From the NCBI RefSeq assembly GCF_000150275.1, contig NW_002060945.1:693872-757871 (forward strand): DNA of 64,000 bases, in the 5' to 3' direction. The position numbers and the translations under genes are program-made. Of this stretch, positions 1 through 4,440 are shown piece after piece. The stretch comes from Trichoplax adhaerens. Its lineage: Eukaryota > Animalia > Placozoa. How positions within the stretch are numbered: the first letter of the stretch is position 1; each line of letters begins with the position of its first letter. The notes beneath the pieces are model-generated. The model made no database searches, was not told where the DNA came from, and saw nothing but the letters and a program-made list of their open reading frames with translations.

Positions 1-2628
1 GTAGATAATGTTGTTTCCTCACTACTACTATTAACTAGTAAAGTTGTGCTGTTGTGTGCAACATGCCGGGTTTCTATTTGATCTTCCTGTTGATGATCCA
101 CTACCATTTGTATCACTTCTTTCTTTTCTCGATCTATCACTAAATATGGATCTTTAACTATCTCTGCCTTTTTTTCTGTACCAGACAAGTGTTTATTCTC
201 ACCGTGATCATTAGTTATAGAAGAATTATTATTATTCTTAGCATCGACACCATTGCCATCATGAGCAGCAGGAAGGTTTTTAATCAACTCTCTTTTGACT
301 GAATCTATTGATGTTGCTAACTTTTGATTAAGCACTTTTATAAAATCGCAAATCCAAGGGTTGGTACTGCTATCATCATGGATAAGATTAACTACTTCGT
401 TATTAGTATTTATAATTTTTGTTGATTGTAGATTCTCGATTATTCCATTTTGAGTTAGAATCCTTATTACAGATGATTTACCGGCATTAGAAAGACCAAT
501 AAACATAAGACGTACGAAATCATTGCGGCGTTTACTATCTATGACTATCTTGAACAAATTAGATAGGAAATTGTCCTCTGTCACACCTAAAACGGGACAA
601 CAAACAAGAGAAAATCTTTTACATTTCACTTAGAAATACATTCTTTTATTTTACTTATTTCTCACTGATACTTTCTGATTTCATTCATACGCGTATAGAA
701 ATTATCATTAAATTAGCTTTACATGTTTATTTATTGCAATGAAATTCAGAAGCTATTTACTACATGAATCATTATTTCATTACGTATTCTATTCAGCTGC
801 CAGTCCAGCTAAGAGCACAAAAATACAAATCTTTAGTCTGTAAATACTGTAAATATACTGTATATTACGTCACTAACTTTATTATACTAACCTTCTTTTT
901 TTCCATTTGCATGATTTTCGGTATCAACATTAACGCTTTGCTCTTGCATTTCTAAATATGTTAAACGACTAAATTAACTACTTTCAGCATCTAAATGATA
1001 CTTGAGGATCAGACAAGGTATTTGATACTCTTATTCATAATATTTCTAATATTGTAACTTGCCTTTTAGTTTGGCTATAATATTCTCTTCAATAAGAGCT
1101 TCCAATTGAGACGGGGTTGCTTTCATTTCTTCTTGATAATCAACAGACTTACTCTCATCTTAAACGAAGAATTTATAAAAATTTCGGAAATTTAACATTT
1201 AAATGATTACTCTTTGTCTAAATACGTACACACATAAAAATATTATTCAATCTATAATCATATCTATCGCACCACTTAAATCGTTATCTTCTCCCTCTGA
1301 TGATTCTATTATGGTCTTAAGAGTTGTTCTCAAGCTATCTTGAAAACAGTCGATACTGCCACCAATATCTTTATAGCAAAAAGATATCAACTCCGTGAAT
1401 TCTTAATTATATACAATCATTAAGCTAACAGTAAATGGCTCAGTAAGTTGTATACCGCGCCAATTCTGTATCGTGCCTTCATTTAAATCTTCAGTGAAGT
1501 CTAGAATTGTTCTTGCTCCAAACTGACATTGCCTGACGTTTTCATCGTCATCTATGATATCAAATAACCAAATAAAATAATATCACAGAGGAATTATAGC
1601 AAATAAAAATCGAATTTCTAATTCTTATCAGCTGACTATATCTTTGATTAGGGGTTACAGAGTAGCAAAAATAAACATATATACTTAAAATAACTGTAAA
1701 ATATTGATGTGAATGTTAAACTATAAGAATAGATGGCTGTAGTAAACTTATTCAAAGCTTACAATCTGATTTATATAACATTCCACCTGTTATGCTTAGA
1801 ACTTTTTCCTGGGCATCTTCAGGATCTTTGTTATTATTTAGTTTAAAATTATGTATATATATATATATAACTAATTATGATACGCTTATTTTTGAAGATA
1901 TTATTTAACTTCATAGTATAAATACTTTAGAATCTAGCTATTTTGTCTATTAATTTATAAATAAAATCGTGAAGGCCGTTAATGAATAAGAACTTTAATT
2001 CTCACCACTCAATTCTTCTATCATTTTTTCAATCGATTCTTCTGTGACTTTCAGCAATACTCTAGAGTCAGACCGACTACGAGTACTATTATTGTTTTTA
2101 TCTGTTAATTAAAGATCAAGGCAAAGCTTGTTAACGTCAAGTTCTGAAACTATGATAGAATATAAATTGTCACTATTCCCAAGAATAATGGTGAAATACT
2201 TACCGTTAGTTTCTTGTACTTCTTTCTCCTCAATTGAATCCGATAAAGCGTCCATCATTACTTTATCGCGTTTTGAGCTATTACCATTTTTCTGATATAA
2301 ATCTATAACCAGAACAAATTTTAATTTTGATGATAACTGAATAATTTAAATTTGGACGGAATTATTGACAGCAATCCATTTTGACAATTTTACCTATAAA
2401 TTCATCTATAGAAATTTCCTTAATTGGTGTTTTCGGAGTACTTGGAATAGCCCAAGAATACTCTAAATCGCTGCTGTCAATGTTACCATCTAGTAGAGTA
2501 CACACGGTATATCAATTAAAAGAGTGATTTTTGATAGTTTATTTATTGCTGTGGCATAATTTTGTTACCGGCTTGATCTTCATTTAATATTCGGTTAAAT
2601 TTCTCAAGGGGAATATCATTATTGTCAT
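1..2628 (-). CDS. Multi-exon ROCO-like (Roc P-loop GTPase) gene, 3' part runs off window; probably continues the TPR exon at 2768-4440
   Basis: Hand-spliced phase-1 exons 2569-2628, 2394-2489, 2204-2302, 2006-2101, 1763-1825 (tentative), 1456-1551, 1273-1368, 1063-1158, then 586-1 open to the window edge. The last exon reads ...RRNDFVRLMFIGLSNAGKSSVIRILT..., a hydrophobic strand plus GxxxxGKS P-loop resembling the Roc G1 region. G3/G4 and COR are not within the window. Confidence 0.7.
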
Positions 2629-2820
2629 CTAATTTATTAAATATGTTCATATTATAGTTTGAAAAAGAAAGAAAAAATTGAATTCGCTAGAAATTTGCCT
2701 GCGTATGATTAGAAGTGATCTTATTAACTTGCATCAATAAGACTACAGGAGTTTTCAATAATTTTACCTTGTGTCTCCAGTGTTGGCTTCCAAATATAAC
2801 TTGATGAAGTAAGGTTATTT

Positions 2821-4440
2821 TTATAAGTTTATTTTAGTTTGAATACTAGAAGATATCTGATGTGCAGTTGCTGCTTCAGAAAATTTCTCTTGTCTTTCAC
2901 AAATAGTCGCAATTTTATCGTATAAATTTGCAATAAATGGATTATTTTCACCAAATAATGTCAATCCAATGGTAAGAGATTTCTGGCACCATGATAAAGC
3001 ATCATAATGTTGGCCTAGGTCAAGGTATAGACTACTAATGCTATCATAAGTATAGGCCACATCGTAATTATTACCGAATAATTGTAACTTAATTTGGACT
3101 GATTTTTTATACATAGTTAAGGCAGTATCATAATCAGATTGCTTATGATAAATACTTGCAATTGCATGATATGAATGGGCAACAAGTAAATTTTCATCAT
3201 CTAATACTTTTAACCGAATATTGAGGCACTTTTGATGATATGATAGAGCATCAGAATAGTTAGCAAGAGATAAATAGATTTGCCCTAGCATGTAATAGGA
3301 TTGAGCAACTAATAAATGATTGTCGGACAATAGAGCTAATCGAATATTGAACGATTTTTCATGCATTTCTTGTGCTTCCTCTATCTTATCCTGATAATAA
3401 TAAATATTACCCATCGCATAATAGGATTGAGCAATGTATAAATTACAATTTCCTACTAATTTTAATCGTATATCCAAGGCCATCTGATACAGTTTCAATG
3501 CATCATCGTATCTGCTTTGTAGATAGTTAACGTTACCAATACCATGATAAGTATCAGCTATGTCTAAATGATACTTATTAAAAATTTCTAGTTTCATATC
3601 TAATGATTTCTGATAGATTTTAACTGCATTATTGCATTTAGATGGCGAACAATGGAGAGTAGCAATAGCATTGTATATGCCGACAAGACTGACATGATTA
3701 TATCCTAAAATTGCCAATTGGATAAGTAAAGATTTTTGATACATTGTCAAAGCGTCATCGTATTGATGTTGTTTTCGGTAGATGTTTGCGATTCCATGGT
3801 ATGAATAGGCAACATATAGATTTTCATCTCCTAACAGATTTAATCTTATATTCAATGATTTTTGATACATTACCAGGGCTTGGCTATTTTCGTCTACTAA
3901 GTAGAGGACAGTAGCAATGCTATGATAGGTGTCGGAGACATGGAGGTTACGATCATCTAACAATGATAATTTGAATTCAAGCGCCTGATTAAAATCCTCT
4001 AACGCTTGTTGATAATGATTTCTGATCGTGTTTAATTTACCGTGGTTATCGTAACATTTAGCTAAGCGAAGTTTATCTTTTACTTTTTTGGCTATCTTTT
4101 CTGCTTGAATACAATATTCTTGAGCATCGTCGTAATGATATTGTTCTCTTAAAGTGTCAGATATATCAAGAAGAATATCACATTGATAGCAGTCTTGTTC
4201 AATAGTAATATCTACTGGATCAACCATCTTATCCAATATTGCTTTGTAGTTGATTAGAGCACTTTGGTACTCTCCTTGTTGAAAATAATATCGGCCCATT
4301 TGTCGTTTCGATTGAATTTCTCGAGTAAGAAATACATTCACTTTCATGCCACCTGATCTTATTGCTTTAACTTTAGGTTGATTTTCTTCATTAGATGAAT
4401 CATGAGACCGCAATAAGTTGCCACCTTCTTGGTTTTCCAT
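2821..4440 (-). CDS. Intronless TPR-repeat protein (42-aa kinesin-light-chain/NPHP3-type TPRs)
   Basis: 539-aa ORF with about 10 repeats of VAxSYHxIAxIYxxQxxYDDALxMYQKSLxIxLxxLGxxN. A splice donor at 2767 lies 1 nt out of phase just downstream. Confidence 0.9.
   Translation of the reverse strand: MENQEGGNLLRSHDSSNEENQPKVKAIRSGGMKVNVFLTREIQSKRQMGRYYFQQGEYQSALINYKAILDKMVDPVDITIEQDCYQCDILLDISDTLREQYHYDDAQEYCIQAEKIAKKVKDKLRLAKCYDNHGKLNTIRNHYQQALEDFNQALEFKLSLLDDRNLHVSDTYHSIATVLYLVDENSQALVMYQKSLNIRLNLLGDENLYVAYSYHGIANIYRKQHQYDDALTMYQKSLLIQLAILGYNHVSLVGIYNAIATLHCSPSKCNNAVKIYQKSLDMKLEIFNKYHLDIADTYHGIGNVNYLQSRYDDALKLYQMALDIRLKLVGNCNLYIAQSYYAMGNIYYYQDKIEEAQEMHEKSFNIRLALLSDNHLLVAQSYYMLGQIYLSLANYSDALSYHQKCLNIRLKVLDDENLLVAHSYHAIASIYHKQSDYDTALTMYKKSVQIKLQLFGNNYDVAYTYDSISSLYLDLGQHYDALSWCQKSLTIGLTLFGENNPFIANLYDKIATICERQEKFSEAATAHQISSSIQTKINL

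What the first reader, a model, noticed from the sequence alone, without database searches (positions are those of the whole stretch)
1063..2628. Array of symmetric ~96-nt phase-1 cassette exons between a TPR domain and a Roc-like GTPase
Seen: eight short minus-strand exons, each starting AG|AT and ending in phase 1. Lengths are 60, 96, 99, 96, 63 (or 96), 96, 96 and 96 nt, so any subset can be skipped in frame and nearly every junction encodes Asp (G|AT). The peptides are highly diverged, yet three align by position (SRVLLKVTEESIE / ARTILDFTEDLNE / LRTTLKTIIESSE), implying serial exon duplication and rapid divergence. Established: ROCO families are expanded in placozoans, and one-repeat-per-exon shuffling has been described for ROCO genes in brown algae as a possible immune-diversifying mechanism. 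Inference: this may be a modular, combinatorially spliced or recombining variable linker in a TPR-Roc receptor-like protein, with a repeat unit I cannot assign to a named domain.
Basis: partly seen in the sequence, partly recalled or inferred. Interest (0 to 1): 0.8.

Follow-up and report, generated by a model that had tools for sequence, protein, structure and literature searches.

The report
Duplicated mini-exon linker in placozoan ROCO gene
The short 96-base exons are real and transcribed, and they encode an acidic, probably floppy tether between the TPR and GTPase parts of one Trichoplax ROCO protein, but they are spliced almost invariantly, so this is a neat case of exon duplication, not a diversity-generating machine.

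Summary
Spliced RNA contigs from three studies reproduce seven of the eight proposed minus-strand exons base for base. They add a ninth phase-1 exon (951-892) and join the chain to a 2.3-kb Roc-COR exon that runs off the window's left edge. The fifth exon is skipped in the dominant form of all three runs; one run includes a 39-nt version at low depth.

All four runs lack one base at window 2827. The stop that ends the TPR ORF therefore comes from an extra base in the reference, and TPR, linker and Roc-COR form one gene. Public models already cover it: P0006 (1564 aa) and Trichoplax sp. H2 RDD42787.1 (P0152, 1629 aa).

At least five paralogues have a single phase-1 intron where this gene has nine or ten phase-1 exons. 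The units share length, phase, AG|AT...G|GT borders and in-register similarity (z 7.8). I read them as serial duplicates of one symmetric exon. The roughly 230-260 aa product is acidic, predicted disordered, and has no relatives outside its own orthologue cluster.

Combinatorial splicing, copy-number change and paralogous arrays were not found. The same scan noted the one-base frame problem separately (s1-733006); it is explained here. Interest is modest.

The parts
2768..4440 (-). First coding exon: start ATG at 4440, about 11 kinesin-light-chain/NPHP3-type TPRs and a short tail. It ends in phase 1 at CAAG|gtaaaa (2768).
   Evidence: ORF and Pfam TPR_12 at 8.7e-80. Contigs run continuously across 2768-4000, and the joint 2768 to 2628 is present in 3 RNA runs. 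The H2 model reads through in frame.
2827..2827 (-). One extra base in the reference assembly. It creates the apparent TAA stop at 2823-2821 and the one-base frame offset between the TPR ORF and the exon chain.
   Evidence: 'Left out 1' at L003 8827 in all four runs, at full depth (table 4). The H2 protein continues ...KINFKNNLTSSSYIWKPTLETQ|D.
2569..2628 (-). Linker exon E1, 60 nt, phase 1-1, AG|AT...G|gt.
   Evidence: Joints 2768>2628 and 2569>2489 in X4, X9 and X10; borders.
2394..2489 (-). Linker exon E2, 96 nt, phase 1-1.
   Evidence: Joints in 3 RNA runs.
2204..2302 (-). Linker exon E3, 99 nt, phase 1-1.
   Evidence: Joints in 3 RNA runs.
2006..2101 (-). Linker exon E4, 96 nt, phase 1-1.
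   Evidence: Joints in 3 RNA runs.
1763..1825 (-). Alternative cassette exon E5. It is skipped in the main form. The RNA joint gives a 39-nt version (1825-1787, donor ACAG|gtggaa). Both public gene models use a 63-nt version (1825-1763, donor GATT|gtaagc).
   Evidence: Joint 1551>2006 in X4, X9 and X10, and a minor joint 1551>1787 in X4 only. Models P0006 and P0152. The acceptor-side joint was not seen.
1456..1551 (-). Linker exon E6, 96 nt, phase 1-1.
   Evidence: Joints in 3 RNA runs.
1273..1368 (-). Linker exon E7, 96 nt, phase 1-1.
   Evidence: Joint 1368>1456 in 3 runs and joint 1158>1273 in X9 and X10.
1063..1158 (-). Linker exon E8, 96 nt, phase 1-1, with a GC donor (AAAAG|gcaagt). It is missing from the reference gene model P0006.
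   Evidence: Joint 951>1063 with ends CT..GC in X4, X9 and X10.
892..951 (-). Linker exon E9, 60 nt, phase 1-1 (AG|AA...G|gt).
   Evidence: Joints to 1063 and to the Roc-COR exon start (L003 6584-6586, window 584-586) in 3 RNA runs.
1..586 (-). Start of the single 2301-nt Roc-COR exon, with the P-loop GLSNAGKS. It continues 1714 bases left of the window (L003 6586-4286) and then splices to a short C-terminal exon at L003 3585.
   Evidence: Open frame. Pfam Roc and COR-A. One contig spans L003 4286-6585, and loose ends at 4286 in 3 runs match L003 3585 downward.

Best explanation
This is one transcribed gene of the large placozoan TPR-Roc-COR (ROCO) family. Its layout is a single TPR exon, then nine constitutive short exons and one rarely used one, all phase 1-1, then one large Roc-COR exon and a short tail.

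Shown:
- The exon chain and its junctions.
- The in-frame continuity of TPR, linker and Roc-COR.
- The near-constant splicing.
- Paralogues have a single phase-1 intron at exactly this position.

Inferred:
- A symmetric 96-nt phase-1 exon arose in that ancestral intron. It was copied in tandem several times, long enough ago that the intron and most of the exon similarity is gone.
- The product, about 233 aa in the main form and 261 aa in the H2 model, is an acidic, largely disordered tether. Each 32-aa unit has a polar first half and a short amphipathic helix-prone second half.
- It works as a flexible spacer or hinge that sets the distance and freedom between the TPR sensor and the Roc-COR switch. 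It is not a generator of receptor diversity.
For: - Canonical GT/GC-AG joints at all exon borders in contigs of three RNA studies. All four runs lack the base at 2827.
- The public H2 model RDD42787.1 (P0152) reads the same chain in frame.
- All exons are phase 1-1, and eight begin AG|AT after a G.
- In-register similarity of the six long units has z 7.8. The E4-E6 pair has p about 0.003.
- Paralogues L005, L011, L012, L033 and L030 have one phase-1 intron of 80-249 nt between the TPR exon and the Roc-COR exon. In four of them the acceptor lies, as here, 31 residues before the P-loop glycine.
- In 17 family proteins the gap from the TPR to the P-loop is mostly 19-90 aa, against 314 aa here.
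- The linker has net charge -34. Its mean hydropathy of 0.395 lies below the charge-hydropathy boundary of 0.46. Every unit is net negative.
- The AlphaFold single-sequence model has pLDDT 33, with one short helix per unit.
- There is no Pfam family, no Atlas neighbour and no word-search relative outside the own cluster.
- Strain differences in the linker are 7 non-synonymous to 1 synonymous. The TPR has 1 to 4 (Fisher p 0.03) and the Roc-COR 11 to 10, as expected for a weakly constrained spacer.
Against: - Pairwise similarity between most units is not significant on its own (mean z 0.18 over all pairs).
- Exons and introns share no DNA repeats. Duplication therefore rests on length, phase, borders and positional pattern. 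A shared structural constraint could mimic part of that.
- The disorder call rests on composition and on a single-sequence model, which also scored the neighbouring TPR low.
- The function as a passive tether is inferred only.
- Contigs drop rare variants, so low-level exon skipping cannot be excluded (notes).
- T. adhaerens and H2 differ at only 3 linker residues, all in E8. The time depth for any evolutionary-rate argument is therefore shallow.
Confidence: 0.62

Rival explanations
1. One reading: the symmetric exons are cassettes that are included in many combinations, or recombine. This would give a population of TPR-Roc receptors with variable linkers, as proposed for the LRR exons of brown-alga ROCO genes.
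For: - Every exon is phase 1-1 and a multiple of 3, so any subset can be skipped in frame.
- One exon (E5) really is alternative and has two candidate donors.
- The H2 model uses another donor/acceptor pair at E8/E9 that adds 7 residues.
- The linker shows a 7:1 excess of non-synonymous differences.
- A precedent exists in PMC11378527.
Against: - Contigs of three RNA studies under two organism labels give the same chain E1-E4, E6-E9. No other skipping joint is listed at a 5% threshold.
- The DNA-like run X1 is colinear with the reference, and H2 has the same units, so there is no copy-number change.
- No second array exists in the genome or among family proteins.
- The units lie in a spacer, not in the ligand-binding repeat domain.
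Confidence: 0.12
2. The units are working motifs and not a passive spacer. They would be repeated acidic amphipathic helices acting as multivalent docking sites. The target would be either the protein's own kinesin-light-chain-type TPR groove (autoinhibition) or a partner.
For: - Each unit keeps an amphipathic helix-prone stretch at the same offset (residues 13-25 in E4, E6 and E7) despite otherwise free divergence.
- The unit length is held at exactly 96 nt in five exons.
- The TPR domain is closest to kinesin light chain among natural solved proteins. From my own knowledge, that TPR domain binds short acidic peptide motifs.
- Phosphorylatable Ser/Thr sit next to acidic residues throughout the linker (sequence).
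Against: - No binding test was run.
- No motif is invariant across units (alignment A1 has a single invariant column).
- The differences between strains are mostly non-synonymous.
- No relative of the unit exists elsewhere, so there is no conservation signal.
Confidence: 0.16
3. The exons arose independently by exonisation of intron sequence. They look alike only because phase-1 compatibility and splice-site consensus filter what can survive.
For: - No DNA-level repeat among exons or introns.
- Most pairwise peptide scores are at the chance level.
Against: - Five exons of exactly 96 nt and two of exactly 60 nt.
- Eight of the nine constitutive exons start with AT, although phase compatibility does not require it. 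Paralogue acceptors are followed by CT, CC or TT.
- In-register similarity has z 7.8.
Confidence: 0.05

Closest known systems
Placozoan ROCO expansion (Civiero et al. 2014, PMC4104024; retold in PMC11378527): at least 17 ROCO genes in T. adhaerens with LRR, TPR, CARD and death domains around Roc-COR
   Same: The TPR-Roc-COR architecture is the same. This gene is one member of that family and is already present as public gene models (P0006; RDD42787.1, named 'Nephrocystin-3').
   Different: My genome search finds 67 matches, which I read as about 45-50 Roc-COR loci. That is well above the published 'at least 17'. This member is unusual in having a 230-260 aa orphan linker of nine or ten mini-exons where most paralogues have a single intron.
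One-LRR-per-exon arrays of brown-alga ROCO genes (Zambounis et al. 2012, PMC3341825; Teng et al. 2024, PMC11378527)
   Same: Both are ROCO genes. Both have tandem, equal-length, symmetric exons upstream of the Roc domain, generated by exon duplication.
   Different: The algal exons are 72 bp, phase 2, each encodes one LRR of the binding domain, occur in many genes, and show several splice variants and positive selection. Here the exons are 96 nt and phase 1. They encode an unassigned, probably disordered spacer, occur in one gene only, and are spliced almost invariantly.
Symmetric exons encoding disordered regions that arise by internal tandem duplication (Schad, Kalmar and Tompa 2013, PMC3632108)
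   Same: The exons are phase-symmetric, tandemly duplicated and encode a region predicted to be disordered. The one alternatively spliced exon is also symmetric.
   Different: That rule was described for the human genome. This is a placozoan example, and here the ancestral empty phase-1 intron can still be seen in paralogues.
Solved prokaryotic ROCO proteins (C. tepidum Roco 3dpu/6hlu/8r4b; M. barkeri 4wnr)
   Same: A profile of the placozoan family matches them at E 1.7e-8 to 2.6e-7 around the switch II region.
   Different: The single sequence finds no solved relative. This Roc has an insert of about 170 aa between G1 and G3. It reads WEFCGQ where paralogues have WDFGGQ/H, and ASYID where they have ASHGD or GTHAD.

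Membership tests
ROCO proteins (Roc GTPase followed by COR) | A Roc (Ras of complex) domain | tested here: met
   Pfam PF08477 scores 27.7 bits against a cut-off of 27, which is marginal. The family profile A3 matches solved ROCO proteins at E 1.7e-8.
ROCO proteins (Roc GTPase followed by COR) | A COR domain directly after Roc in the same chain | tested here: met
   Pfam COR-A PF16095 scores 36.6 bits against a cut-off of 35.3, at residues 441-586 of the same 772-aa exon.
ROCO proteins (Roc GTPase followed by COR) | Canonical G motifs (G1 GxxxxGKS/T, G3 DxxG, G4 NKxD or THxD) | tested here: inconclusive
   G1 GLSNAGKS is intact. G3 is ExxG (WEFCGQ), against DxxG in 22 of 23 aligned paralogues. 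G4 is ASYID, against ASHGD or GTHAD.
ROCO proteins (Roc GTPase followed by COR) | GTP binding and hydrolysis | not testable with these tools
   This needs a biochemical assay.
Exon-shuffled, alternatively spliced receptor arrays of the brown-alga ROCO type | Each exon encodes one unit of a recognised ligand-binding repeat | tested here: not met
   None of the six units matches a Pfam family; the single listed hit (GATase_6, E 0.081, 13.4 bits against a cut-off of 27) is noise. The whole linker gives none at E 0.1. The units lie between the TPR domain and Roc.
Exon-shuffled, alternatively spliced receptor arrays of the brown-alga ROCO type | Several splice variants with different exon combinations | tested here: not met
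   The same chain is seen in three RNA studies, and only E5 is alternative. Contigs can miss rare forms.
Exon-shuffled, alternatively spliced receptor arrays of the brown-alga ROCO type | Similar exons in many genes of the genome | tested here: not met
   The unit profile finds only its own six exons in the genome. Against 150 family proteins its scores do not exceed those on reversed sequences.
Tandemly duplicated symmetric exons encoding a disordered region | Same intron phase on both sides of every exon | tested here: met
   All nine constitutive exons and both versions of E5 are phase 1-1. The junctions are confirmed by RNA.
Tandemly duplicated symmetric exons encoding a disordered region | Units related by duplication | tested here: met
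   Five exons are 96 nt. Borders are shared (AG|AT...G|gt). In-register z is 7.8. The paralogues have an empty ancestral intron. Support is moderate, because there is no DNA-level similarity.
Tandemly duplicated symmetric exons encoding a disordered region | The encoded region is intrinsically disordered | tested here: inconclusive
   The charge-hydropathy plot says disordered. pLDDT is 33, but from a single-sequence model. There is no experimental test.
Kinesin-light-chain / NPHP3-type TPR domain | Tandem 42-residue-type TPRs matching TPR_12, TPR_10 and TPR_NPHP3 | tested here: met
   TPR_12 at 8.7e-80 in 8 stretches and TPR_NPHP3 at 148.8 bits against a cut-off of 100. Kinesin light chain 1/2 structures match at E about 1e-12.

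The most novel reading that the evidence does not exclude
The array is a tunable regulatory module. It would be a chain of acidic amphipathic units that dock one after another in the protein's own kinesin-light-chain-type TPR groove, or on a partner. The optional exon 5 and rare skipping would set the tether length, and so the threshold at which the TPR sensor releases the Roc-COR switch.
Probability: 0.1. Interest if true: 0.55.

Novelty: new member of a known kind. Interest (0 to 1): 0.3.

Why it matters
The locus is a clean example of how a multidomain signalling gene grows. Paralogues still keep the ancestral state, one phase-1 intron between the TPR and Roc-COR exons. Other paralogues have a death domain between the TPR and Roc. 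This gene has filled the intron position with serial copies of a symmetric exon.

It corrects the reference. One extra base makes the gene look like two. The reference model also lacks a GC-donor exon and contains an exon that is usually skipped.

It shows that the placozoan TPR-ROCO family is about three times larger than the published minimum.

It does not show a new diversity-generating mechanism.

Tried and rejected
- A profile of the six units against the whole genome found only the six exons themselves. Against 150 family proteins it scored no better than on reversed sequences.
- Pfam on each unit and on the whole linker gave nothing. ESM Atlas features gave no usable hit. The word search with the linker region of P0152 found only its own cluster.
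- AlphaFold on P0152:500-870 as a single sequence gave mean pLDDT 33. That is too poor for a fold search, so none was run.
- Direct and tandem DNA repeat searches over 800-2800 gave only short chance matches.
Paralogue structure was therefore read only in the 0.9-1.4 kb held upstream of each Roc-COR exon.
- The only more distant orthologue found (P0001, 53% identical, from two metagenome contigs) starts inside the Roc-COR exon. It says nothing about the linker.
- I considered a degenerate death domain as the identity of the linker, because P0008 and P0010 carry one between the TPR and Roc. I rejected it because there was no Pfam signal at E 0.1.
- Complex prediction (TPR against linker) was not run. 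The main explanation does not claim binding, and a negative result would say nothing.
Exons were searched one by one by reference. The joined analyses used the public models P0006 and P0152 that the tools returned.
Full report
**Where this is.** The window lies at 693872-757871 of a 9.66-Mb contig in a genome of 105.6 Mb and 1414 contigs. The proteins it encodes are public Trichoplax adhaerens models, and their nearest relative is from Trichoplax sp. H2. I fetched L003, which covers 6000 bases left of the window plus window 1-4000. Window position equals L003 position minus 6000.

**Checking the observation.**
- On the minus strand, an ATG-to-TAA ORF of 539 aa (4440-2821) is followed by short open stretches and then by an open frame with a P-loop at about 500.
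- I laid contigs of four public runs on L003:4001-10000, which is 6000 letters.
- Run X1 is unspliced and colinear with the reference, so it looks like DNA.
- X9 is on record as RNA. X4 and X10 are guessed to be RNA, but their contigs are spliced. The three come from three studies and two organism labels. They carry joints with GT-AG ends, and one with GC-AG ends.
- Those joints give exons 2628-2569 (60 nt), 2489-2394 (96), 2302-2204 (99), 2101-2006 (96), 1551-1456 (96), 1368-1273 (96), 1158-1063 (96, GC donor) and 951-892 (60).
- The chain then enters one exon that starts at 586 and runs to 1714 bases left of the window.
A ninth exon of the same phase class follows.
- The fifth exon (1825-1763) is skipped by the main contig of all three RNA runs. 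X4 alone has a weaker joint from 1551 to 1787, which implies a 39-nt version. The acceptor-side joint was not seen.
- Every exon is phase 1-1. Eight junctions read G|AT (Asp), one reads G|AA and one reads G|GT. In X9 and X10 a base change at 586 turns that last junction into G|AT too (table 5c).

**One gene, not two.**
- All four runs lack one base at window 2827, at full depth (table 4).
- Without that base the TAA at 2823-2821 is out of frame. The TPR exon then reads on to CAAG|gtaaaa at 2768, ending in phase 1.
- The H2 protein reads ...KINFKNNLTSSSYIWKPTLETQ|DDNND....
- This explains the separate note s1-733006, that the TPR ORF is one nucleotide out of frame. The cause is an extra base in the reference assembly.
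- The reference model P0006 (1564 aa) bridges the frame problem with an artificial intron, omits the GC-donor exon E8 and includes the 63-nt E5.
- The H2 model P0152 (RDD42787.1, 'Nephrocystin-3', 1629 aa) includes E1-E8 with the 63-nt E5. At E8/E9 it uses a different donor/acceptor pair that adds seven residues. The three RNA runs support the GC-AG joint at that junction.

**The flanking domains.**
- The first exon matches TPR_12 (8.7e-80, eight stretches) and TPR_NPHP3. Among natural solved proteins it is closest to the kinesin light chain TPR domains.
- The large exon matches Roc (27.7 bits, cut-off 27) and COR-A (36.6 bits, cut-off 35.3).
- The single sequence finds no solved relative. A profile of 15 family members matches the solved ROCO proteins 4wnr, 3dpu, 6hlu and 8r4b at E 1.7e-8 to 2.6e-7.
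- The Roc of this member is divergent. G1 is intact. G3 is WEFCGQ where paralogues have WDFGGQ/H. G4 is ASYID where they have ASHGD or GTHAD. About 170 low-complexity residues separate G1 from G3.

**The family, and where the exons sit.**
- The genome holds 67 matches to the Roc-COR exon, which I read as about 45-50 loci. Each is one open frame of about 700-800 aa, 30-43% identical to this one. The literature reports 'at least 17' (PMC4104024).
- I mapped public family models onto the loci. In L005, L011, L012, L033 and L030 the TPR exon and the Roc-COR exon are separated by a single phase-1 intron of 80-249 nt.
- In four of those loci the acceptor lies, as here, 31 residues before the P-loop glycine.
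- In 17 family proteins the distance from the last TPR to the P-loop is mostly 19-90 aa. In this gene it is 249 aa (P0006) or 314 aa (P0152).
- Two other long-gap members, P0008 and P0010, carry a weak death-domain match between the TPR and the P-loop.
- The mini-exons of this gene therefore occupy an ancestral phase-1 intron. Only phase 1-1 exons can be added there without breaking the frame.

**Are the units copies of each other?**
- For: five exons are exactly 96 nt and two are exactly 60 nt. All are phase 1-1. Eight start with AT after the acceptor, whereas the paralogue acceptors are followed by CT, CC or TT.
- For: The in-register sum-of-pairs score of the six long units is 33, against -312 +/- 44 for shuffles (z 7.8). 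E4 against E6 has p about 0.003.
- Against: most pairs are not significant alone, and there is no DNA-level repeat among exons or introns.
- I take serial duplication of one symmetric exon, long ago, as the best reading.

**What the linker is.**
- It has no Pfam family, no Atlas neighbour and no relative outside its own cluster.
- The unit profile finds only its own exons in the genome, and nothing above background in 150 family proteins.
- The linker has 62 acidic and 28 basic residues in 261, and every unit is net negative. Its mean hydropathy is below the charge-hydropathy boundary, unlike the TPR, Roc core and COR parts.
- A single-sequence AlphaFold model has pLDDT 33 and places one short helix in the second half of most units. 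This is weak evidence.
- Differences among the four runs are 7 non-synonymous to 1 synonymous in the linker, 1 to 4 in the TPR and 11 to 10 in Roc-COR. Linker against TPR gives p 0.03, and linker against the rest gives p 0.05. This fits weak constraint. The numbers are too small to argue for positive selection.
- H2 and the reference differ at three linker residues, all in E8.

**Verdict on the interpretation.**
- Real and supported: the exon array, its symmetry, the flanking TPR and Roc-COR, and an origin by duplication.
- Not supported: combinatorial splicing, recombination or copy-number change, and paralogous arrays. Three RNA studies show one chain with one optional exon. The DNA-like run and H2 have the same units.
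- Contigs drop rare variants, so low-level skipping remains possible.
- The most likely role is a flexible acidic tether or hinge between the TPR sensor and the Roc-COR switch.
- A role as repeated docking motifs, for example for the protein's own TPR groove, is possible but untested.

**Known or new.**
- The gene and the family are known. The phenomenon, symmetric exons duplicated in tandem and encoding disordered regions, has been described for the human genome (PMC3632108).
- The brown-alga ROCO arrays (PMC3341825, PMC11378527) are the nearest analogy. They differ in phase, in unit type, in number of genes and in splicing.
- In four literature searches I found no description of this array.
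- I file it as a new member of a known kind, of modest interest.

**Method note.** Exons were searched one at a time by reference. All analyses of the joined linker used the public proteins P0006 and P0152 returned.

Noticed in passing
window 2827: The reference has one base more than all four public runs laid on it. It splits the TPR-linker-Roc-COR gene into an apparent 539-aa ORF plus a chain that is out of frame. The H2 orthologue is in frame.
   Followed up: yes
window 586: C>T in runs X9 and X10, at the first base of the Roc-COR exon. It changes the junction codon from G|GT (Gly) to G|AT (Asp), the same junction residue as in the mini-exons.
   Followed up: partly
window 952-1062: A GC-AG intron after exon E8, confirmed in three RNA runs. 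The reference gene model P0006 misses the exon. The H2 model avoids the GC donor by using a GT 4 nt downstream and an acceptor 17 nt upstream, which adds GNRLTYL.
   Followed up: yes
L003 4286-6586 (window 586 to 1714 bases left of the window): This Roc domain is divergent. G3 reads WEFCGQ where 22 of 23 paralogues have DxxG, and G4 reads ASYID. About 170 low-complexity residues lie between the P-loop and G3. The 53%-identical orthologue P0001 reads WWEFGSN. This could be a weakened or pseudo-GTPase.
   Followed up: partly
whole genome G000 (loci L005-L033): There are 67 matches to the Roc-COR exon, which I read as about 45-50 loci, most of them one uninterrupted 700-800-aa frame. Several lie in clusters (C1392, C1389, C1404, C1414, C1372, C1368) and some carry stops. 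The published count is 'at least 17'.
   Followed up: partly
P0008 residues 428-786; P0010 residues 424-670 (locus L006): In these paralogues the region between the TPR and the P-loop holds a weak death-domain match (18-20 bits, cut-off 22.6). In locus L006 the candidate linker exons are also phase 1. The ancestral intron position may be a module-insertion hotspot.
   Followed up: partly
L003 3553-3585 and about 3386-3472: After the Roc-COR exon the transcript splices (G|gtatgc...ttttag|AT, phase 1, Asp again) to a small exon. Loose ends in three runs confirm this first joint. The public models add one more exon, giving a 44-aa tail. The second joint was not checked.
   Followed up: partly
L040 and L041 (metagenome contigs, ENA): Two metagenome assemblies hold a Roc-COR exon that is 53% identical to this one. 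It is presumably from another placozoan lineage and has a stop inside the low-complexity insert.
   Followed up: no
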